In this document: positions 131 to 43,582 of the stretch, one piece after another
Layout: the number at the start of each line of letters is the position of its first letter
Numbering within the stretch: position 1 is the first letter of the stretch
Source: Bugula neritina
Lineage: Eukaryota; Animalia; Bryozoa
Assembly: GCA_964035545.1 (NCBI GenBank)
Contig: OZ037772.1
Span: forward strand, 5,398,233-5,462,232
Length of the DNA: 64,000 bases
Direction of reading: 5' to 3'
Program-made: the position numbers and the translations under genes
Notes under the pieces: model-generated
Seen by the model: the letters and a program-made list of their open reading frames with translations, nothing else
Databases searched by the model: none
What the model was told of the DNA's origin: nothing

Positions 131-1579
131 CTGAAATAGATTATTTGCATCTGTTCCAAATTTTGACACCGTATACAAAGTGATGAGTATGGAGATCCAC
201 TTGTATCCATGGAGATAACTCTCTGTCTGTGTGAGCTATGCTTGTGTGTTCAGGATGATTATGCTGAGATGGCAGATAAAAGCCGTCAATAGCTTTCTCA
301 CCAAGGTAGTAAGCACTAAATTCAGTGGACAGATCAACTTTGTTACCTAAAATGCAGCCATAAGCAAGTCTAGTAAAACTTTAGTTTTGTAATTTGTTGC
401 ATTATCAAACTTTTGAATTATTAATAAAAACTTTTATAGCTTTTCTCTAAAAAAACCTTTATATACTTTTATACTTCAGTTATATGTTGTTTATTTTAAG
501 GTAGCTATCTTTATTTATTTTCCTTGGCCTTCAATTAGTGGAGGAAGATAACAAACTCTGAAATTATTTTGATTGACTTGCTAATTAATAATGGGTGCAG
601 GCAAAAGTTTTTTGCAATTCAACATTTTGTAGTATGCCTTAAAGCACCCTGCATGTTCTTAGAGTCAGTCTGACTATCAACCCTTGAACCTATGTAAGCT
701 TTTTTATGTTATTTTAGATAGCAGCAAATATAATAAAGACTTTCAAGCATCAATTTTTTTTACAAACTCACAGCATATATATATTTGTTTCTAAAATGAG
801 TCTGTAAATTCATTGTCTAGATTGTCTGTCTCTCACCTCTAGCAAGCAACATTGAGAACTCATAAATCTCAATGTCATCAGAGTGAATCAGTTTGACAGA
901 TGCTATTTCCTTAGTGTCAGTTGAGTTTACAATCACATTTGATGTTCTTGACATCTTGCAGGTGCTTGTAGCTCTCTCATATGACACAGCAGCACATGAT
1001 GTGTTGATTGCACAAACAAACAGACAGTGTTGGTGTGTGGGAAGGTATTTTGTGTTGTGTATTTCCAGTAAGGACGAATAGTTCTGGTTAGTGTACACAC
1101 CTATTGCTGAAACAGATGTAACATAATTATAACATATGAAATAAGTTTTATAATGATCATAATTCAAAGTCCAACTTTTATGGTAAACTAAATGTAATAA
1201 TGCAAACTCAATAAGGAAACAGTATGTCTTGCAGGTTTTTTTTAAATATAACTCTGCGCAAACAAAGAAACAGAAATTACAATCTGGCAACTAACATAAA
1301 CAAATAAAATTACCTCAAATTGTAAACTGCTTTATGTGCAGGAAAATAGCAATACATTGAGTAACGGAGTTATGTTGGTCATAGAATTTAACACAGCTGA
1401 GCTCGACAAATATTAACTGACATTATGTAGTTAAAAAAGAAACATGCTATAGTGAATTTCATTTTTTGTCTAGTTTGTTTTTTTTCAGTATTATTAAATT
1501 AAGCAAACTTACTGCATGAACAACTAGCCTGAACAACCGTGAGCAACAAAACCAGAATTTCATTTATCCAACCCATCAT
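131..1579 (-). pseudogene. PAN/apple + F-type lectin paralogue A; last exon lies off the window; premature stop in exon 3
   Basis: Exons: 1579-1513 (signal peptide MMGWINEILVLLLTVVQASCSC), 1106-837 (270 bp PAN, C-x3-C-x5-C-x11-C) and 346-131 (F-type N-half, ...AIDGFYLPSQHNHPEHTSIAHTDRELSPWIQVDL...KIWNRCK*). All introns are GT-AG phase 1. TAA at 143-141 falls where paralogues B, E and F have H. Confidence 0.8.
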
Positions 1580-1743
1580 TGTCTAGCTCTAGTAATCTTG
1601 TGTCCAGGTACATCTGTTGATTGCAGAATGTATGAACTGTCTCGCATTACAGCTGCAACTTAATTGGCAACCATTAATATTTAATAAACTTTTTTCCCAC
1701 TGGGTAACTTAACAGTTTTTGTATAATCCTTTGCAATAGGTAT

Positions 1744-2194
1744 TGTATCGGTTTGTGTTTGTGTCTGGTTGCAAGATATGCTTTAACTACTAGCCAACTT
1801 GGCAACAGGTTTTCGAGTTTATTAACTGTCAAATCGTACCCTATAAAATGGGAAACATTAGAAATTGTATAAATAAGTAGTCACAATATAAATCAAAATT
1901 CAGAGGAACACTATGAATATTACAGAACCAAAAAATTGACATGAACTATTGTAATTCTAATAAACTTACAATATTGATGCGTGGATAAAAATCTTAGCCA
2001 TCACAATACCGAAACCGATAGTTTATTCATACAAAGAGTGTAAATATGGCGGTTTGATCATGATACACTGACTCATGCAGTACAGTGAATGAACTAGCTC
2101 TGCCAGCTAATAGTAGCTTTGGTGAAAGCTTTTGAAGCTTGAAAGCTTTAATGATTGGCTGCCTGCCAATACTTCTGGGTGGCATACCAATACA
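1744..2194 (-). repeat. 3' LTR of BEL/Pao element
   Basis: 451 bp, TG...CA termini, no difference from 7471-7921 found by eye. Confidence 0.95.
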
Positions 2195-2423
2195 TCGGTG
2201 GGGTCGAATTGTTTGGCAGATACTATTCTGACAAATATTGATAAATTATGTAAATCAAAACAAACAAAACAAACAAAACAAAATAGGATCAGTCACAGAC
2301 CATGAAATTCTTGCACCAATCCGCTGACCCCTCCGCGCACCAGCCCGTCCCCCGAAAAATGGTTGAATGCAGACCCCTCCAGCGACACGAGCGTACACGC
2401 GGCCAAGAAGGTAGATCAGTCAT

Positions 2424-5400
2424 TTATGGGTTCACTTCAGTTAATAAAGCCAACCTATGCACGCTGCGGGTTATGATATTGTCTTTACAGCCTACATAGT
2501 CCCTCAGTTTCCCTGCTACCTTATAGTTTTTGTAGGAAAAGGCTACTTTTCTTACTACGCCATCCTTGCTCGGATATACTTGATGTACTCGAGCTAGTTT
2601 ATACTGATTACGCAGCTGATTTGGATCCATAACCACTACAACATCTCCCACCTGAAAGTTTCGTCTTGGGGTATGCCACTTTTGGTGATGAATCAGTGTG
2701 GGTGCATACAATTCGGTCCACTTCCGCCAGAAGTCATCTGAGACTGTATTTACCAAAGCCAGTCGCCCCCTTAAGGAGTAGTCTGTATTCCAGTTGCCAG
2801 GATTCTTGATGAAGGGTCGTCCAATAAGTTGACAGTTAGGTGTTAATATGTTGATCTCAGAGTCTGAATCTGGCAGTAATCCCAATGGCCTTTCATTTAG
2901 TGTGTTTGCAGCTTCAGTGCAGATTGTGAGAAATTCTGTAGGTGAAAGCCGGCGGTTGCTCTTTGAAAATGTGAAACATCTCTTGACAGCCTTTATGAGT
3001 GATTCAGCAGCGCCCTGATACCAGGGGCTGTCACCAGGTCCAAATTCCCATTGCAACCCATTTTCTGCACTGGTTTTCTTGATAGAATCTTTGTCCATGC
3101 GTCTCCACATATCTTTGAGTTCTTTTTCTGCTCCAGCTAACTGTGTTCCAGGATCAGAATAAATCTTGGATGGCCAGCCACGAATGTTGACGAATCGAGT
3201 TAATGCCAACAGGAAAGAATCACTGTCATATCCGAAAACTGCTTCGATGTGTGCTGCTCGTGAACTGATGTCTGTGAATATTACTTCATAAGCTTTGCTC
3301 GAAGTTCTAGTCTGTTTTTCTCCTCTCACAATATACGGACCAAAAAGATCTATCATTACATTGTTGAATGGCGGTCCGGTCGTTAGTCGTTCTGTAGGAA
3401 GACTTCCCATCAGTTGATCAGTAAAGCGAGGTTGTTTGAGTCGACACATTTGGCATGATGTTACTATGCCCCTAGCAACCTTAGATCCTTGCATAGTCCA
3501 AAACTCTTCTCGGAATCTTGCGAGTGTTGCATCTCGGCCACGGTGATAGCTGTTTATGTGTGCCTGCCGCATTGCCAAGTAAGTAAAGTAGTGAGAGGTG
3601 GGAAAGATTGATTGCGTGTGCGTTTTAATCGCTGTCATGGGGTTATGCCTTAGGAGTCTACTGCCTACTATCCATACTTCACTCTCTGTCTTAATGGGGT
3701 GAAGCCTTGTGTATTTCTCTTTAATCTTGCTCAACTCAGAATCTATAGTGCGTTGTACCTGCTTCAGTAAGTAGAGTTTGGTCTGCCGTAGATCTTCCAC
3801 GGTGATGAGATCAGATTGGATTCCCTTAAAACTTTTGTATTTGAAGATGTTGCAAACTCGAGCTATTGTCCATGTTAGACTCTTGAGGCTGCTGAAATTT
3901 TCATATTTAATAAATGATTGGACTTCTGTTGATGCAGTGACGGTGTAAACTATTTTCTTCTCTCCAAAGACAAGCTCATTCGAGTCAGATGGCGATTTTA
4001 TATCCCATTGATCCTCAGGCAGATAGAGAAAATTTGGGCCTCTCCACCATTCACTCTCAGGTCCAATGTCATTGACAGGCTTCCCTCTTGTAAGCCAATC
4101 TGCTGTGTTTTCCTTGCCACTTACCCAGTGCCAGCAGCTCATATCCCCATTGGTTGCTCCCTGAATTTCTCCAATGCGTACACCTTCGTAAACATGAAAC
4201 CTTGTTGACTTCTTTTGGAACATCTTGAGCACCGTTTTAGAATTGATAAGCTGATAAACTTTCTCAAACTCATAGCGCATTTCAGTCTTAATAACTTGTC
4301 TGCCTCTCTTTGACCATACGGCCGCATTGAGTTCTAGTTGAGGAATCTTGAGTTGTTGTTTTATGGGTGCTATACGACATTTAGCTGTAGCTTTGTTTAC
4401 CCCTTTAGCAGTCGCTTTAGATTCTGCCCTCTCATTGGCCGGAACAGGCGTGGATTGTGTGATAGAGGTACTGCTAGTAAATTCATACTTTCTTTTAATC
4501 TCTACAGACATGGACATAGAGTCATTGACTTCTAAAGATCTGTTCAACTGTCCAGAACCGATTTGTCCTGCAGACTCAGTGTCTGGGTCTCCCGGGCTCT
4601 GTAAAGGGTCGGAATCATCGGCTGACTCAATCATACCACATTCAGTGGCTATAGTATGTGATTCACCATAATTTATAATAGTCTGAGGTCTTGAAAATGA
4701 CTTTGCAAACTGACTGGGAGATGCGTCGGGACTATTGACACTGTAAGTTGGCGTAGAAACTGTAGACAATTCAAAATCACAACTGTTGAGCGTGTCGTTG
4801 TGTATGCTTTGAGTGAATTCAACTTCCTCTAACTTCTCATGCGCCATGGTAGCCTGTACATGAAAAGATGAGGATGGAAGTGTAGAAAAGTTGCTAAGGG
4901 TAGGGTGTGATCCCTGCACACACAGTCCAAAGGGTCCGGAATATACATAGAGGTGAGGTCCTGCTTGATCAACTTGGTGTTTTGGATGCAATCCAAGAAG
5001 ATCGTTACCAATTAGCAGGTCGATGGGTCCCGTCTTCTTCAATAGCTTGTGAGTATCTACTTTCGGGAAGAGAGATTTGAGGATGTTTGCATCAAGTGGC
5101 CTGTTGATAGCCCCTGTGAGTTTCCGAAGGCTGTAAGCTAAAATCGAAAAGGTCCTTCCCTTTGGAGTTTGTAACTTTACTTCATAAATAGTAGAAGTTT
5201 CGCTAACTTCATGTTCACCAAGTGTGTTCATTTCCAAATTCACCTTATCTATCTGTCGCGCACCCCACGCTTTAGCGGCTCTCTCCGATATGAATGAAGC
5301 ATTGGATCCGCCGTCAAAGAATATAATAGCTGTATGAGATGTACCCACTACTTGGGCCTGCTGAATGGCAAATACTGTAGCATTTCCTGGATGATTGTGC

Positions 5401-7448
5401 GCTCCATGATTGGGAGACACACGGACCGTGGTGCTAACAGCAGACGCTTCAGAATTCTCGTTACTCTTGTGCTTAATTTGATTAGCTCTTGCTTTATTCT
5501 TGTTGGTATTACAATTGGTATGTGTATTAGTTTCAGCTGATTTGATGCACAATAATACATGGTGGGTTGTTTTATCACAGACTGAACAAGGGGTTCGGAA
5601 ATTTGGACAGCACTTGGGCTTATGGGCACCCAAGCACCTAGCACATAGAGAATTAGTTTTTATTAACTTGTATCTTTCATCTACAGACAACGCCAAGAAA
5701 TTTCTGCACTCAACAAGACAATGACGCTCACTGCGATGAATAAAACAGTAATTCTCACTATCAATGGTTTTGCTATTATTAGTAGACCTGTTACTACTAG
5801 ACTTTGGGCCACTGCTTTCAGTGTGGAACGCTTTCACCTTCTGTTTATGCATACTGGAGGACTGCGGGTTTACGGTTTCTATGCGTCTGAGGGCTATCTG
5901 CCGTTCTTGCTCTAGAAACCTCATGAGGTGTGGGAATGGCTTGATTCTCTCCTCGTGAGTAAGTATGTGAAAGTGTCTATCCCAGTCCCGTCTAATGCTT
6001 GTAGGTAATAGGTTTGCAAGAGTATCGACCTGTGGCAGCATAACAGTTTGCAACAGTCCCACTTCACCGAGTTGGCTGTACGAACTTTCTACTGCATTGG
6101 CCATTTTGACGAGTTCTCGTGCATCGCCTTCTTTTACTGGCTTTAGTTCTTGTAGATTGTTGAAGACTGCTTGCACACTCATGCTAGGATCATTGTAGAC
6201 CTCTTCTAATCTACACATCATTCTCTCATAAGCTTGAGGCTGAGTTGCAAAGATTGGCTGAACCATCTCCAGAGCTTCGCCTGTGAGAAATTTTTTTAAT
6301 TCACAAGCCCTATCGACATCATCGTAAAACATAGTGGCATACCTTAGCCACACTGACCTAAATTCCGGCCAATGGTATCTAGTGCCGTTAAATGGATTGG
6401 GTTGTGAATGAGTTTTATGTATAGATGAATTGAAGTTATTTCCACCTGTATGTCTAGAGTCATAACTTATTTGACTAGTTCCATTAGGGTAGCTATCATA
6501 TGCATTGACAACCGAGGAAGTTGCACCGCGAATCAAAAATTCAGAATGAGCTGCACGATCAGTACTACCATGTAGATCACGTACTGAGAATGTAGAAGAA
6601 CGAACATCTCTGACATTGGTACTTGCTATGACACCTGGATTTGACGCCAAAGCTTCACCGGATGTGTGATCTTCCCATAGTACCTGCCTATCACTACCGC
6701 TTGCTGTGACACCTGGATTTGGTGCAAGAGTAGCCTCATGTGTGCTAGGGTGTGATCTAGAAGAAAACAACCGACTCGACGCGACCATAGTCGGTGCATG
6801 ACTCGCGCCGTCTGAAGGTGACTCCCCACCCACACCACTCTCCGCAAGACCGGACCGGACTACGGACGGATCAGATTCACGGTGTTCGAAATTCATGTTC
6901 TGTGACTGAGCCTTTGACATAAGAGTAAACTTAGACATACAATAATCTAAAGATAAAATAACTTCATCTAGTTCTAATAATAAATCAGAAAAACCTATGG
7001 TATCTGCCAAACTTTCTGAAAGAGCTACACATTTCCTATGATGTTCAGTGATAAGAGTATTGTCAGTACAATCAGCAACTAATCCATTGGCTTTCTTAAT
7101 TGCTAAAATAAGGCTGTGCTTGATTTTATAGAATTTGCTATGCCAAGTATTACAGTCAGAAATAGCTTTGTCATAACTAGCCTTTACAGCTTGATAGTAC
7201 TCTACTGGACTCATCTTATTAACATAAGCAATGTCTTCCATAGATTCATCTGATGAAACGTATTCCAAAAAGTCATAATGGATAGTTAGAAACTCTTGAT
7301 ATGTAGATTCAAGCTGAGATCGCAGGCATTCCACTTGTGTAGAGTTGCTACTAGAGATTGCTGATTCTATGAGATTAGTTAGCATTGTTACCTTAGACCT
7401 CAGAGTAGTACGTTGCTTCTTGAGATTAACTATGTCCTGTCGGTCCAT
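2424..7448 (-). CDS. BEL/Pao gag-pol polyprotein (Gag, 3 zinc knuckles, aspartic protease, RNase H C-terminal part, integrase); RT absent
   Basis: 1674-aa ORF: Gag region (FNGTRYHWPEF...LKKFLTGEA), knuckles CFIH..H...C / CARCL.AH....C / CSVC...HHVLLC, protease FFDGGSNASFIS, Pao RNase H AKCRIAP...IPQLELNAA...ENTADWLTRG, integrase HHCC plus DLFGP / SDPG / WYQGAAESLIK. No YxDD-type RT motif lies between protease and RNase H. Confidence 0.93.
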   Translation of the reverse strand: MDRQDIVNLKKQRTTLRSKVTMLTNLIESAISSSNSTQVECLRSQLESTYQEFLTIHYDFLEYVSSDESMEDIAYVNKMSPVEYYQAVKASYDKAISDCNTWHSKFYKIKHSLILAIKKANGLVADCTDNTLITEHHRKCVALSESLADTIGFSDLLLELDEVILSLDYCMSKFTLMSKAQSQNMNFEHRESDPSVVRSGLAESGVGGESPSDGASHAPTMVASSRLFSSRSHPSTHEATLAPNPGVTASGSDRQVLWEDHTSGEALASNPGVIASTNVRDVRSSTFSVRDLHGSTDRAAHSEFLIRGATSSVVNAYDSYPNGTSQISYDSRHTGGNNFNSSIHKTHSQPNPFNGTRYHWPEFRSVWLRYATMFYDDVDRACELKKFLTGEALEMVQPIFATQPQAYERMMCRLEEVYNDPSMSVQAVFNNLQELKPVKEGDARELVKMANAVESSYSQLGEVGLLQTVMLPQVDTLANLLPTSIRRDWDRHFHILTHEERIKPFPHLMRFLEQERQIALRRIETVNPQSSSMHKQKVKAFHTESSGPKSSSNRSTNNSKTIDSENYCFIHRSERHCLVECRNFLALSVDERYKLIKTNSLCARCLGAHKPKCCPNFRTPCSVCDKTTHHVLLCIKSAETNTHTNCNTNKNKARANQIKHKSNENSEASAVSTTVRVSPNHGAHNHPGNATVFAIQQAQVVGTSHTAIIFFDGGSNASFISERAAKAWGARQIDKVNLEMNTLGEHEVSETSTIYEVKLQTPKGRTFSILAYSLRKLTGAINRPLDANILKSLFPKVDTHKLLKKTGPIDLLIGNDLLGLHPKHQVDQAGPHLYVYSGPFGLCVQGSHPTLSNFSTLPSSSFHVQATMAHEKLEEVEFTQSIHNDTLNSCDFELSTVSTPTYSVNSPDASPSQFAKSFSRPQTIINYGESHTIATECGMIESADDSDPLQSPGDPDTESAGQIGSGQLNRSLEVNDSMSMSVEIKRKYEFTSSTSITQSTPVPANERAESKATAKGVNKATAKCRIAPIKQQLKIPQLELNAAVWSKRGRQVIKTEMRYEFEKVYQLINSKTVLKMFQKKSTRFHVYEGVRIGEIQGATNGDMSCWHWVSGKENTADWLTRGKPVNDIGPESEWWRGPNFLYLPEDQWDIKSPSDSNELVFGEKKIVYTVTASTEVQSFIKYENFSSLKSLTWTIARVCNIFKYKSFKGIQSDLITVEDLRQTKLYLLKQVQRTIDSELSKIKEKYTRLHPIKTESEVWIVGSRLLRHNPMTAIKTHTQSIFPTSHYFTYLAMRQAHINSYHRGRDATLARFREEFWTMQGSKVARGIVTSCQMCRLKQPRFTDQLMGSLPTERLTTGPPFNNVMIDLFGPYIVRGEKQTRTSSKAYEVIFTDISSRAAHIEAVFGYDSDSFLLALTRFVNIRGWPSKIYSDPGTQLAGAEKELKDMWRRMDKDSIKKTSAENGLQWEFGPGDSPWYQGAAESLIKAVKRCFTFSKSNRRLSPTEFLTICTEAANTLNERPLGLLPDSDSEINILTPNCQLIGRPFIKNPGNWNTDYSLRGRLALVNTVSDDFWRKWTELYAPTLIHHQKWHTPRRNFQVGDVVVVMDPNQLRNQYKLARVHQVYPSKDGVVRKVAFSYKNYKVAGKLRDYVGCKDNIITRSVHRLALLTEVNP

Positions 7449-15928: not shown

Positions 15929-25280
<9,352 letters not shown>

Positions 25281-26556: not shown

Positions 26557-26866
<310 letters not shown>

Positions 26867-26908
26867 TAGCAGGATGGAATCAGGCTGAAATGGCTATTAT
26901 TCACTTAC

Positions 26909-33720: not shown

Positions 33721-33893
<173 letters not shown>

Positions 33894-34266
33894 ATATATC
33901 TCACCTTTTTGTATTGCATAATATAATAACAAATTATAGAGTATTGAGTTATAATGTACAACCTAATAGGTATACTATATATATTCCAATGTGCATCATT
34001 ATAATTAACCCTATTATTTTGTTAAAATATATAGTGTACAATGGTAATAGAATAGAGTGAATAATAATTAACATAATATTATTTCTGTCTTAATATTAAA
34101 ATGTTATGCATATTACACATTTAAAAGTTCAACAGTTTATGTTAAATTTTGAAGTATGATTAACACATAAAATTATTATAAAACTTTTACAGCATGAAAA
34201 TATATGTTGAAACAATATTACAGTGTTGCTACAGTGCTAAAAGTAAACTATAATAAACTACTACAG

Positions 34267-42056: not shown

Positions 42057-42191
<135 letters not shown>

Positions 42192-42236
42192 TATATATAT
42201 ATAAAAGTAATGAACGATAAAATTTGGTTTAAAACA

Positions 42237-42289
42237 CTTTATTACTACTAGTTTCATGTGCATTGAATGTACACAATCTTCAGATAAAA
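42237..42289 (-). ncRNA. Degenerate minimal hammerhead motif (same family as 23870)
   Basis: TTTTAT-CTGAAGA-TTGTGTA cattcaa TGCACAT-GAA-ACTA G TAGT-A-ATAAAG; the first stem II pair is U.U instead of R-Y. Confidence 0.5.
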
Positions 42290-42296
42290 TGTTAAG

Positions 42297-42388
<92 letters not shown>

Positions 42389-42393
42389 CTCAA

Positions 42394-42440
42394 TCTGTGG
42401 ACAGCAGCTGTCTCGGGGTTTGTCCCCTCATCAGCACAGA
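42394..42440 (-). ncRNA. Hammerhead ribozyme copy with core mutation (GAAA to GAGA), likely inactive
   Basis: TCTGTG-CTGATGA-GGGG acaaa CCCC-GAGA-CAGC T GCTG-TC-CACAGA. Confidence 0.75.
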
Positions 42441-42665
42441 ACAGAGTACCATGGCCCACACCTTGGCAATAGTAGAAACTTATGTTTCTACTAAAGCATA
42501 TTTAAAAGGTGTGTAAACTCAAGCCAGAGAACTCAAGTGACTCTAGGGGTCACCTAGGAATCACGAGCCTTGCAAAATGCTAGCAGCTTGAGTTTGTGAC
42601 CATGGTGAGAGAGCTCAATCACTGAATGTCATTGCTGAGCATTAAGTGAGAGCATAATACCTCAA

Positions 42666-42712
42666 TCTGTGGACAGCAGCTGTTTCGGGGTTTGTCCCCT
42701 CATCAGCACAGA
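42666..42712 (-). ncRNA. Type I minimal hammerhead ribozyme (intact core)
   Basis: TCTGTG-CTGATGA-GGGG acaaa CCCC-GAAA-CAGC T GCTG-TC^CACAGA: 6-bp stem I, 4-bp stem II, palindromic stem III, GUC cleavage triplet. Confidence 0.88.
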
Positions 42713-42937
42713 ACAGAGTACCATGGCCCACACCTTGGCAATAGTAGAAACTTATGTTTCTACTAAAGCATATTTAAAAGGTGTGTAAACTCAAGCCAGA
42801 GAACTCAAGTGACTCTAGGGGTCACCTAGGAATCACGAGCCTTGCAAAATGCTAGGAGCTTGAGTTTGTGACCATGGTGAGAGAGCTCAATCACTGAATG
42901 TCATTGCTGAGCATTAAGTGAGAGCATAATACCTCAA

Positions 42938-42984
42938 TCTGTGGACAGCAGCTGTTTCGGGGTTTGTCCCCTCATCAGCACAGA
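42938..42984 (-). ncRNA. Type I minimal hammerhead ribozyme (intact core)
   Basis: Identical to 42666-42712. Confidence 0.88.
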
Positions 42985-43436
42985 ACAGAGTACCATGGCC
43001 CACACCTTGGCAATAGTAGAAACTTATGTTTCTACTAAAGCATATTTAAAAGGTGTGTAAACTCAAGCCATATATATATGTGTGTGAGTAATTATTATGA
43101 TAAACAATATATTACTCATAACTGTTTTATATTCTGTCATTAGATGAAAAATAGTATTGTTGAGATAAAAATTGAATGTTTTGCTTCTAATCAAATAATA
43201 ACAGGAATTGCTGCATAGAAGCTAAGTATCTTATCTGAGTAAACTAGCTATACACATTGTACTTCAAACCTGAAATTGCTAGTGAAAAATAAATGAAAAA
43301 TATACTACGCCTTCTGAGATGAATGCTGTCCTATCCTACTATATACTGTGTTTACTTTACTATACAACACTAAACTGCACTAGGCCATACTCCGCTACAC
43401 TAAACTATGTTATACGATAATAATTATGTGTAGCTA

Positions 43437-43582
43437 TGCATTGCACTGCATTGCACTGCACTGCACCGCACCGCACCGCACCGCACCGCACCGCACCGCA
43501 CCGCACCGCACCGCACCGCACCGCACCGCACCGCACCGCACCGCACCGCACCGCACCGCACCGCACTGCACCGCACTGCACT
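43437..43582. repeat. (GCACC/GCACT)n pentanucleotide repeat
   Basis: Direct inspection; a degenerate (CTATA/CTACA)n counterpart lies at ~49280-49880. Confidence 0.93.

What the first reader, a model, noticed from the sequence alone, without database searches (positions are those of the whole stretch)
42386..43070. Tandem hammerhead-ribozyme repeat (retrozyme-like) predicted to release a 272-nt, possibly circular, RNA
Seen: a 272-bp unit repeated 2.5 times. On the minus strand each unit has a type I hammerhead (stem I UCUGUG/CACAGA, core CUGAUGA, stem II GGGG-ACAAA-CCCC, GAAA, palindromic stem III ACAGC-U-GCUGU, GUC^). The rest of the unit is self-complementary (TAGTAGAAAC-ttat-GTTTCTACTA hairpin, AAACTCAAGC/GCTTGAGTTT, GTGAC/GTCAC, two CCATGG palindromes). 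Known: animal non-LTR retrozymes and Penelope pseudo-LTRs are head-to-tail repeats of a few hundred bp with minimal hammerheads. Their palindromic stem III favours dimeric cleavage, and retrozyme monomers can circularise. Inference: cleavage at 42944/42943 and 42672/42671 would free a 272-nt monomer, so this may be an undescribed retrozyme family mobilised in trans by a Penelope-like RT.
Basis: partly seen in the sequence, partly recalled or inferred. Interest (0 to 1): 0.85.

Follow-up and report, generated by a model that had tools for sequence, protein, structure and literature searches.

The report
Hammerhead retrozyme copy in (TA)n repeat
This is a real, young copy of a small non-coding mobile element that carries a self-cutting hammerhead RNA; the kind (animal "retrozymes") is already known, but hundreds of sister copies in this genome show clearly how such elements are pasted into (TA)n repeats.

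Summary
Window 42386-43070 is a 272-bp unit repeated 2.5 times at 99% identity. Each unit has a full type I hammerhead on the minus strand. Two cores are intact; the third has an A14-to-G change in the GAAA core and is probably dead. The predicted cuts at 42944|42943 and 42672|42671 are correct and bound a 272-nt, highly structured RNA (z = -6.9).

It is one insertion of a dispersed family. At least 326 copies share the same 3' junction, and 397 sites (vs 21 in the control) match a hammerhead pattern, nearly all with this core. All sampled copies lie in (TA)n microsatellites. They end at one fixed point 15 nt past the cut site and start at variable points, with a sharp peak at exact unit length. 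There is no ORF, and no Penelope coding sequence in the 1.5-kb flanks fetched or in the window.

An abundant young Penelope-like family in the same genome has the same (TA)n target and fixed-3'-end logic, but no DNA similarity to the unit.

Verdict: a new member of the known non-LTR retrozyme class (Cervera & de la Peña 2020). Self-cleavage, expression and circularity are not shown. Rfam does not call the motif. The scan had already found this family on other DNA of this genome (s1-437835 and others).

The parts
42386..43070 (-). Whole insertion: 2.5 head-to-tail units of the 272-bp retrozyme. It is 5'-truncated at unit position 1 and has the canonical 3' end at unit position 141.
42799..43070 (-). 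Unit 1 (5'-most on the RNA strand), full 272 bp. One private change (unit position 215).
42527..42798 (-). Unit 2, full 272 bp.
42386..42526 (-). Unit 3, partial (unit positions 1-141). It ends at the family's fixed 3' terminus ..CCACAGATTGAGGTA.
42938..42984 (-). Hammerhead 1 (helix I to helix I). Core intact. Predicted cut between 42944 and 42943.
42666..42712 (-). Hammerhead 2. Core intact. Predicted cut between 42672 and 42671.
42394..42440 (-). Hammerhead 3. The core GAAA reads GAGA (A14 to G at 42412), so it is probably inactive. The cut would fall at 42400|42399.
42672..42943 (-). The 272-nt monomer RNA that double cleavage would release. Folded as a linear RNA: -103.6 kcal/mol, z = -6.9. 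Folded as a circle: -97.2 kcal/mol, 71% paired.
42057..42384 (.). (TA)n microsatellite, the target tract, directly abutting the element's 3' end.
43071..43079 (.). Short (TA)4 remnant of the target at the 5' junction. The junction TATA|TGGCTTGAG recurs in at least 5 independent loci.

Best explanation
The array is one 5'-truncated insertion of a non-autonomous, non-coding retroelement of the animal non-LTR retrozyme class.

Proposed life cycle:
1. (Inferred) A transcript through two or more units folds its type I hammerheads, alone or as a double hammerhead through the near-palindromic helix III.
2. (Inferred) It cuts after GUC and releases a 272-nt, strongly base-paired monomer. A host RNA ligase can close this into a circle.
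3. (Shown by the junctions) New copies arise by target-primed reverse transcription at a nick in a (TA)n microsatellite. Synthesis always starts at the A/U patch UAUUAY right after hammerhead helix I, 15 nt past the cut site. The template must therefore be uncut or re-ligated across that site.
4. (Shown) The cDNA runs for 0.2 to 5 units. It is joined back to the (TA)n tract at AT/TA microhomologies, most often at the same patch, which gives exact unit-length copies.
5. (Inferred from variants shared by all units of an array) Multi-unit arrays are copied from a single monomer template. This means rolling-circle reverse transcription of the circle, or repeated monomer-to-monomer template jumps.
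6. (Inferred) The enzyme is supplied in trans by a resident Penelope-like element with a GIY-YIG nuclease that targets (TA)n.

At this locus two ribozymes are intact and one is mutated. If the locus is transcribed it can release exactly one monomer.
For: Hammerhead:
- All invariant core positions and three helices are present in 2 of 3 units.
- The catalytic fold lies only 2.4 kcal/mol above the MFE. Two motifs cofold into a double hammerhead at -47.1 kcal/mol against 2 x -19.4.

Family:
- 746 BLAST candidates on contigs C1-C9.
- 397 hammerhead pattern hits against 21 in the control, nearly all with this core.
- 326 exact canonical 3' junctions into (TA)n against 0 in the control.

Junctions:
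- In 24 sampled arrays the 3' end is fixed at unit position 141-145. All 24 run into TA repeats; 23 pass the strict (TA)4 test. The 5' starts are scattered.
- Genome-wide 5'-start counts per 30-nt bin, in order of increasing distance from the 3' end, fall 22, 13, 15, 4, 7. They then jump to 44 at unit length.

Single-monomer template: variants shared by all units of one array. Examples are 164G>T 3/3, 154T>C 3/3, 97T>G 3/3, and in the window 62G>C 3/3 plus 239 and 268 at 2/2.

Non-autonomous: no stop-free run over 49 aa even as a concatemer, and no Penelope-like coding sequence in the fetched flanks or the window.

Candidate partner:
- A 775-aa ORF with RVT_1 and a GIY-YIG-type C-terminus. Its nearest Atlas clusters combine RVT_1 with GIY-YIG.
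- 399 candidates at about 97-99% identity, 5'-truncated.
- The 17 3' ends listed stop within 5 nt of one another, and 16 of them run straight into (TA)n.
- Copies of both elements sit in the same (TA)n tract.

The published model predicts exactly this: a DNA-target-primed circRNA giving tandem cDNA copies, with PLEs as mobilisers (PMC7229834; bioRxiv 10.64898/2026.07.22.740005).
Against: - No Rfam hammerhead model reaches its gathering score.
- Self-cleavage was not assayed.
- RNA evidence is inconclusive. Two polyA RNA runs gave 0 reads, but they are from a differently labelled organism, so this is no test.
- The run with high word depth (1000-3800) is only guessed to be RNA and could be DNA of a multi-copy repeat.
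- Contigs that join unit end to unit start fit multimers as well as circles.
- The unit shares no sequence with the one Penelope-like family examined. Other retroelements could supply the RT.
- The unit-length peak can be explained by TA microhomology alone, without a circular template.
- The family is too uniform (94-100% identity) to give covariation support for the helices.
- Junction counts rest on exact patterns and on a BLAST-ranked sample of 24 arrays. Further loci could not be fetched.
Confidence: 0.8

Rival explanations
1. Same element and same integration, but the template is a linear, uncleaved multimeric read-through transcript, or linear monomers linked by end-to-end template jumps. 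No circular RNA is involved.
For: - The 3' boundary lies past the cut site, which an uncleaved linear RNA explains as well as a circle does.
- One array's 5' end shows a jump at a CAC microhomology coinciding with the first bases after the cut site.
- One array is chimeric between subfamilies, which fits template switching.
- The unit-length peak can come from TA microhomology alone.
Against: - Array-wide private variants need a step that turns one mutated unit into all units of a daughter array. A plain copy of a parental multimer does not provide this.
- Published retrozymes accumulate mainly as circles (PMC7229834).
Confidence: 0.3
2. The repeat is a pseudo-LTR remnant of an autonomous Penelope-like element, left after 5' truncation or deletion of the ORF. 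It is not an independent element.
For: - Penelope-like elements carry hammerheads near their 3' ends and form partial tandems (PMC8557442).
- This genome has abundant such elements in (TA)n.
- In Xenopus, retrozymes are sequence relatives of pLTRs (bioRxiv 10.64898/2026.07.22.740005).
Against: - No Penelope-like coding sequence in the fetched flanks of the sampled arrays or in the window.
- No DNA similarity to the resident family's termini, and a different hammerhead sequence.
- The full-length class is exactly one 272-bp unit, with a sharp peak.
- Where the two elements are neighbours, about 100 bp of (TA)n separates them.
Confidence: 0.05
3. An ordinary minisatellite or satellite amplified by unequal crossing-over. 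The hammerhead-like motif is incidental and has no role.
For: Rfam does not call the motif at its gathering score. There is no direct evidence of cleavage.
Against: - At least 326 dispersed insertions with an identical 3' terminus and variable 5' ends, all in (TA)n. This is a retrotransposition signature, not local amplification.
- Sampled arrays are 5 units or shorter.
- The complete 11-position core plus three helices is kept in 397 sites against 21 in the control.
Confidence: 0.03
4. A retrozyme as described, but mobilised by a LINE or other non-Penelope reverse transcriptase.
For: - No sequence is shared with the Penelope-like family examined.
- Active LINEs exist in this genome according to an earlier scan note (not checked by me).
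Against: - The (TA)n target and a fixed 3' end at an A/U patch are shared with two Penelope-like families here.
- (TA)n bias is a described property of several Penelope-like clades (PMC8557442).
- There is no poly(A) or LINE-type tail.
Confidence: 0.1

Closest known systems
Metazoan non-LTR retrozymes (Cervera & de la Peña, NAR 2020, PMC7229834)
   Same: - Short tandem repeats (150-450 bp) of low GC, each with a type I hammerhead.
- No ORF, LTR, PBS or PPT.
- Dispersed in many copies, with a strongly self-paired monomer.
- Co-exists with hammerhead-bearing Penelope-like elements.
- Species-specific sequence.
   Different: - Expression and circles are not shown here.
- The hammerhead has a 4-bp helix III with a near-palindromic sequence. 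No loop-loop contact could be verified.
- The strict (TA)n target, the fixed start point next to helix I and the unit-length peak are not mentioned in the passages I retrieved from the papers I consulted.
Penelope-like elements and their pseudo-LTR hammerheads (Cervera & de la Peña 2014; Craig et al. 2021, PMC8557442)
   Same: - Hammerhead close to the 3' end.
- 5' truncation and tandem arrangement.
- Insertion bias for (TA)n.
- The 3' boundary lies downstream of the ribozyme cut site.
   Different: - No RT/GIY-YIG ORF.
- The unit is 272 bp.
- No sequence similarity to the resident family examined.
- The hammerhead differs in core (CUGAUGA against CUGAAGA) and in helices.
Newt satellite 2, axolotl retrozymes and Schistosoma Sm-alpha hammerhead repeats
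   Same: Repeats of about 270-350 bp, transcribed in those species into monomers and multimers. Type I hammerheads with a weak or palindromic helix III that can act as dimers.
   Different: Those form very large copy numbers or long arrays. Here there are hundreds of short (5 units or fewer) insertions at a defined target. Helix III is longer here, so activity as a monomer is plausible.
Plant LTR retrozymes (Cervera et al. 2016, PMC4918200)
   Same: Non-autonomous elements with hammerhead-delimited RNA that circularises and is thought to be the template for reverse transcription.
   Different: The plant elements have type III hammerheads inside LTRs, PBS/PPT, 4-bp TSDs and Gypsy machinery. None of these is present here.

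Membership tests
Hammerhead ribozyme, type I | Invariant core C3 U4 G5 A6 N7 G8 A9 / G12 A13 A14 / A15.1-U16.1 / H17 | tested here: met
   Present in units 1 and 2. Unit 3 has A14 to G.
Hammerhead ribozyme, type I | Three helices around the core, with helix I open (5' and 3' ends in helix I) | tested here: met
   - Helix I is 6 bp plus an outer extension, helix II 4 bp with a 5-nt loop, helix III 4 bp with a 3-nt loop.
- The Rfam alignment lays it out this way.
- The catalytic fold is -17.0 kcal/mol against an MFE of -19.4.
Hammerhead ribozyme, type I | Score at or above the gathering threshold of an Rfam hammerhead covariance model | tested here: not met
   No hit at gathering. The best are RAGATH-1-hammerhead at 15-16 bits (cut-off 56.3) and Hammerhead_3 at 14.9 bits (cut-off 48.5).
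Hammerhead ribozyme, type I | Covariation supporting the helices | tested here: inconclusive
   The family is 94-100% identical. The only subfamily change inside a helix, at unit position 109 in helix II (C to U), keeps a G-U pair.
Hammerhead ribozyme, type I | Site-specific self-cleavage | not testable with these tools
   Needs in vitro transcription and a cleavage assay.
Metazoan non-LTR retrozyme | Tandem repeats of 150-450 bp, each carrying a type I hammerhead, with GC below 50% | tested here: met
   272 bp, 2.5 units, GC 44.9%.
Metazoan non-LTR retrozyme | Non-coding, with no LTR/PBS/PPT | tested here: met
   The longest stop-free run in the concatemer is 49 aa. The flanks are (TA)n only.
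Metazoan non-LTR retrozyme | Dispersed multicopy family with retrotransposition signatures | tested here: met
   At least 326 canonical 3' junctions. Fixed 3' end and variable 5' end.
Metazoan non-LTR retrozyme | Highly self-paired monomer RNA | tested here: met
   z = -6.9. The circular fold is 71% paired.
Metazoan non-LTR retrozyme | Expressed as linear and circular RNA of unit length | tested here: inconclusive
   
- Contigs of one RNA-labelled run and one oligo-dT metatranscriptome cover the unit and its end-to-start joint.
- RNA cannot be told from DNA, nor circle from multimer.
- The raw-read runs gave 0 reads, which is no test.
Metazoan non-LTR retrozyme | Co-existence with autonomous Penelope-like elements | tested here: met
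   An abundant young RT + GIY-YIG-type family. A second family is seen in L066.
Penelope-like element pseudo-LTR remnant | Physical continuity with, or sequence homology to, a Penelope-like element's terminus | tested here: not met
   tblastn finds nothing in the fetched flanks of the sampled arrays or in the window. blastn of the unit against 30+ Penelope-like loci finds only separate retrozyme insertions. Other Penelope-like families were not tested.
Classical satellite DNA | Long local arrays grown by unequal crossing-over, without defined insertion termini | tested here: not met
   Sampled arrays are 5 units or shorter, at hundreds of sites, with one fixed 3' terminus.

The most novel reading that the evidence does not exclude
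The family may be a natural record of how animal retrozymes are mobilised.
- A circular 272-nt RNA is primed by the nicked (TA)n target at one fixed A/U patch, directly after hammerhead helix I.
- It is copied by rolling-circle reverse transcription. This would explain arrays whose units all share private variants.
- Synthesis is terminated or captured at the same patch, which would explain the sharp unit-length class.
- The enzyme would be a (TA)n-specific Penelope-like RT/GIY-YIG protein that shares no sequence with its passenger.

If so, recognition would rest on structure or on the A/U patch. This would be the first junction-level evidence for the so far hypothetical mobilisation step, and it would define a minimal cis element.
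Probability: 0.4. Interest if true: 0.6.

Novelty: new member of a known kind. Interest (0 to 1): 0.4.

Why it matters
Retrozymes are a recognised source of abundant small circular RNAs in animals. How they are copied back into DNA, and by which enzyme, is still a hypothesis.

This young and uniform family offers three things:
- a fixed start point for cDNA synthesis;
- a single simple target, (TA)n;
- a co-resident Penelope-like family of similar within-family identity and the same junction logic.

Together these form a compact system for testing the mobilisation step by experiment. For genome annotation, it shows that these 272-bp repeats in (TA)n tracts are transposon insertions. They are neither satellites nor parts of Penelope elements.

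Tried and rejected
- **Rfam.** I ran it at gathering score on the whole window and at permissive E-values on 851 nt and 76 nt. No hammerhead family passes. The top rows are artefacts of the (TA)n tract.
- **GIY-YIG searches.** Pfam GIY-YIG over the whole genome gave one unrelated hit. Pfam on the Penelope-like C-terminus gave nothing. A PDB sequence search with that protein gave nothing. Its nuclease assignment therefore rests on motifs read by eye and on the Atlas neighbours.
- **Sequence link to the partner.** blastn of the unit against the Penelope-like loci found no homology.
- **Selection on the hammerhead.** Per-site diversity is flat, 0.020 in the hammerhead against 0.018 elsewhere, so this is uninformative.
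- **RNA evidence.** I laid reads on one monomer. The two raw-read polyA runs gave zero reads and carry a different organism label, so this is no test. The contig-based runs cannot separate RNA from DNA or circle from multimer.
- **Unbiased sample of loci.** I used anchored pattern counts instead. On the forward strand these count overlapping matches, so only the reverse-strand counts (one per locus) were used.
- **Species.** The species is coded and I did not identify it. I therefore could not check whether this particular family has been named before.

Full report
**1. Observation**

Tandem Repeats Finder reports 42386-43070 as a 272-bp period, 2.5 copies, 99% matches. Aligned on the minus strand, the two full units differ at one base. 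The partial third unit differs from them at one other base.

Each unit reads, 5' to 3' on the minus strand: UCUGUG, CUGAUGA, GGGG-ACAAA-CCCC, GAAA, CAG-CUG-CUG, UC, then CACAGA. This is a complete type I hammerhead:
- core C3-A9 and G12-A14;
- the A15.1-U16.1 pair;
- C17 as the cleaved nucleotide;
- helix I open.

A 25-nt core pattern occurs 3 times in the window and never in 100 dinucleotide-preserving shuffles.

In unit coordinates the cut lies between 127 and 128. The third motif (42410-42434) reads GAGA for GAAA, an A14-to-G change at 42412. A14 is one of the invariant core positions (established mutational work on the hammerhead, from my own knowledge). That copy is therefore probably inactive.

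**2. Strength of the ribozyme call**

Rfam does not support it formally. There is no hit at gathering score. With permissive settings there are only sub-threshold matches: RAGATH-1-hammerhead at 15-16 bits and Hammerhead_3 at 14.9 bits. The printed alignment nevertheless places helix I, CUGAUGAG, helix II, CGAAAC, helix III and GUC as expected.

Energetics:
- The catalytic three-way junction of the 68-nt motif costs -17.0 kcal/mol, against -19.4 for the MFE.
- The MFE uses a competing GCUG/CAGC pairing.
- Two motifs cofold into a double hammerhead with an extended helix III at -47.1 kcal/mol.

But helix III can form 4 bp with a 3-nt loop. That is longer than the invertebrate retrozyme helices reported to cleave well as monomers (PMC7229834).

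The family is too uniform for covariation. The one subfamily change inside a helix, at unit position 109 in helix II, keeps a G-U pair.

The 272-nt monomer folds at -103.6 kcal/mol, z = -6.9. The opposite strand gives z = -4.4. As a circle it gives -97.2 kcal/mol with 71% of bases paired.

**3. A dispersed family**

The genome is 216 Mb in 321 contigs. The unit has 746 BLAST candidates on contigs C1-C9, in two subfamilies at about 99% and 94% identity to the window copy.

- A hammerhead pattern finds 397 sites against 21 for the reversed control, and nearly all carry this core.
- The exact 3' junction GTCCACAGATTGAGRTATATATAT occurs 326 times against 0 in the control.

The window's own junction has one mismatch and is not counted, so 326 is a lower bound on the number of insertions.

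**4. Anatomy of the insertions**

In 24 independent arrays of 62 to 1385 bp:
- The 3' end is always at unit position 141-145 (..CCACAGATTGAGGTA) and runs into TA repeats. 23 of 24 pass a strict (TA)4 test and the last has a shorter TA run.
- The 5' ends are scattered over the unit. 17 of them abut (TA)n by the same strict test, and 20 by my reading once three BLAST boundary effects are allowed for.

Genome-wide, I counted 5' junctions with patterns of (AT)5, a gap of 0-30 nt, and an anchor in the unit. I used the reverse-strand counts, which are one per locus.

| 5' start (unit position) | Loci |
|---|---|
| 86-116 | 22 |
| 48-78 | 13 |
| 252-10 | 15 |
| 184-214 | 4 |
| 158-188 | 7 |
| 116-146 | 44 |

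The frequency of truncated copies falls with distance from the 3' end. It then rises sharply at exactly one unit.

Most junctions in that peak read (TA)n|TATTAYGCTC, which is the same A/U patch where the element ends. Truncated 5' ends sit at AT, TA or TG microhomologies. The window's junction, TATA|TGGCTTGAG, recurs in at least five loci.

This is the signature of target-primed reverse transcription with a fixed initiation point and variable completion.

The initiation point is 15 nt downstream of the ribozyme cut site. The template therefore cannot be a cleaved linear monomer. It must be uncleaved, or re-ligated as a circle.

**5. One monomer as template**

Many arrays carry variants that are present in every unit of that array:

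| Array | Variant | Units carrying it |
|---|---|---|
| C5:5783789 | 164G>T | 3/3 |
| C5:8343357 | 154T>C | 3/3 |
| C6:10670686 | 97T>G | 3/3 |
| C9:2739386 | 157A>T | 2/2 |
| C5:9208675 | 55C>G | 2/2 |
| C6:10755397 | 69T>C | 2/2 |
| Window | 62G>C | 3/3 |
| Window | 239C>T and 268C>T | 2/2 each |

Most were seen in no other sampled array; a few (62G>C, for example) recur in one other. Other differences are private to single units.

Turning one mutated unit into every unit of a daughter array needs a monomer-to-multimer step. That means rolling-circle reverse transcription of a circular monomer, or repeated jumps between monomers. This fits the published but untested model of a DNA-target-primed circRNA giving tandem cDNA (PMC7229834, discussion). 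It is an inference, not a demonstration.

In the window array, the two private changes (unit position 215 in unit 1, and the A14G in unit 3) would then be errors made during or after insertion.

**6. Not a Penelope remnant, but probably a Penelope passenger**

The unit has no stop-free run over 49 aa, even as a concatemer. tblastn with the resident Penelope-like protein finds nothing in the 1.5-kb flanks fetched for the sampled arrays or in the whole 64-kb window.

An earlier scan note (s1-444337) pointed me to a locus on the same contig. Features of the element found there:
- It has a 775-aa ORF with RVT_1.
- Its C-terminus reads as a Penelope-type GIY-YIG nuclease with the CCHH pattern. This is read by eye, since Pfam gives no hit.
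- The nearest ESM Atlas clusters combine HTH_animal, RVT_1 and DUF8422, and some carry GIY-YIG, at score 0.97.
- The element has a pseudo-LTR, because the start of the ORF recurs at the 3' end.
- It carries its own minimal hammerhead, CUGAAGA...GAAAUAUC.
- It has 399 candidates, most at 97-99% identity, most of them 5'-truncated.
- The copy examined has a premature stop in the nuclease region. Another copy is open through it.

The 17 3' ends listed stop within 5 nt of one another, at an A/U patch, and 16 of them run straight into (TA)n. A second Penelope-like family, with a different hammerhead that has a palindromic helix III, also ends in (TA)n.

The retrozyme shares no DNA similarity with the first family. 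Where the two lie side by side, (TA)n separates them.

The (TA)n bias of several Penelope-like clades is described in PMC8557442. The derivation of animal retrozymes from such elements is argued in bioRxiv 10.64898/2026.07.22.740005. A shared target, shared junction logic and similar within-family identity make trans-mobilisation the best reading. The partner has not been proven.

**7. Expression**

The run search returned mostly contig-only runs. I laid four runs on one monomer.
- The two raw-read polyA RNA runs gave 0 reads. They carry a different organism label, so this is no test.
- A 2016 run labelled RNA-Seq random, where RNA is only a guess, has word depth of about 1000-3800 across the unit and contigs that join unit end to unit start.
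- An oligo-dT metatranscriptome has depth of about 10, with the same joint, mostly at 90-95% identity.

A repeat with hundreds of genomic copies could give such depth from DNA. The joint fits multimers as well as circles. Expression and circularity are therefore open.

**8. Context of this copy**

The insertion sits at the edge of a 328-bp (TA)n tract (42057-42384), with a (TA)4 remnant on the other side (43071-79). Three other long (TA)n tracts in the window are empty. I did not establish whether the locus lies in a gene or is transcribed.

**9. Comparison and novelty**

All sequence-level criteria of metazoan non-LTR retrozymes are met. The RNA criteria are untested. The pLTR-remnant and satellite readings fail their defining tests.

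The class, the circRNA life cycle and the Penelope link are all published, so this is a new family of a known kind.

I did not find three points in the passages I retrieved from the papers I consulted:
- the strict (TA)n target;
- the fixed cDNA start next to helix I;
- the discrete unit-length class together with array-wide variants.

The scan had already met this family on other DNA of this genome (s1-437835, followed up with the same verdict; also s1-441605, s1-445843, s1-442867, s1-445936). My tests agree with those notes.

Noticed in passing
window 2424-7448 (-): A 1674-aa open frame of a BEL/Pao-type element with DUF1759, Peptidase_A17, Integrase_H2C2 and DUF5641 but no reverse-transcriptase hit. 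Only about 225 aa lie between protease and integrase. Earlier scan notes describe similar RT-less BEL/Pao copies elsewhere in this genome.
   Followed up: partly
L032:6880-10000 (G000:C8:1951880-1954999), and L034-L063: An abundant, young Penelope-like family.
- It has a 775-aa RT + GIY-YIG-type ORF, a pseudo-LTR and its own minimal hammerhead.
- Its 3' ends are fixed within 5 nt and nearly all run into (TA)n.
- There are 399 candidates, most at 97-99% identity.
   Followed up: yes
L066:4300-4900 (G000:C8:457800-458400): The 3' end of a second retroelement family. It has a different hammerhead (CUGACGAG..CGAAAC, palindromic helix III ACUAUAUAGU) and also ends in (TA)n. A similar motif lies at G000:C2:5124953.
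   Followed up: no
G000:C8:2722300-2722717 and 2722890-2723307 (L008/L009): Two identical 418-bp retrozyme insertions 590 bp apart with identical flanks. This looks like a local duplication of an insertion together with its (TA)n context.
   Followed up: no
G000:C1:19014110-19014715 (L019): An array chimeric between the two subfamilies: the 3' unit is subfamily 1, the 5' unit subfamily 2, and the middle unit mixed. All three share 121T>C. The cause could be template switching or recombination.
   Followed up: no
G000:C9:3146058-3147442 (L003): The longest sampled array, about 5 units. At its 5' end, unit positions 133-153 are joined to 131 onward through a CAC microhomology that coincides with the first three bases after the ribozyme cut site. 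This is a single case.
   Followed up: no
window 18074-18173, 26557-26868, 33724-33899: Three further long (TA)n tracts in the window carry no insertion. (TA)n is a common and mostly unoccupied target in this genome.
   Followed up: no
window 43453-43581: A (GCACC)n microsatellite about 400 bp from the array. It has no evident link to the element.
   Followed up: no
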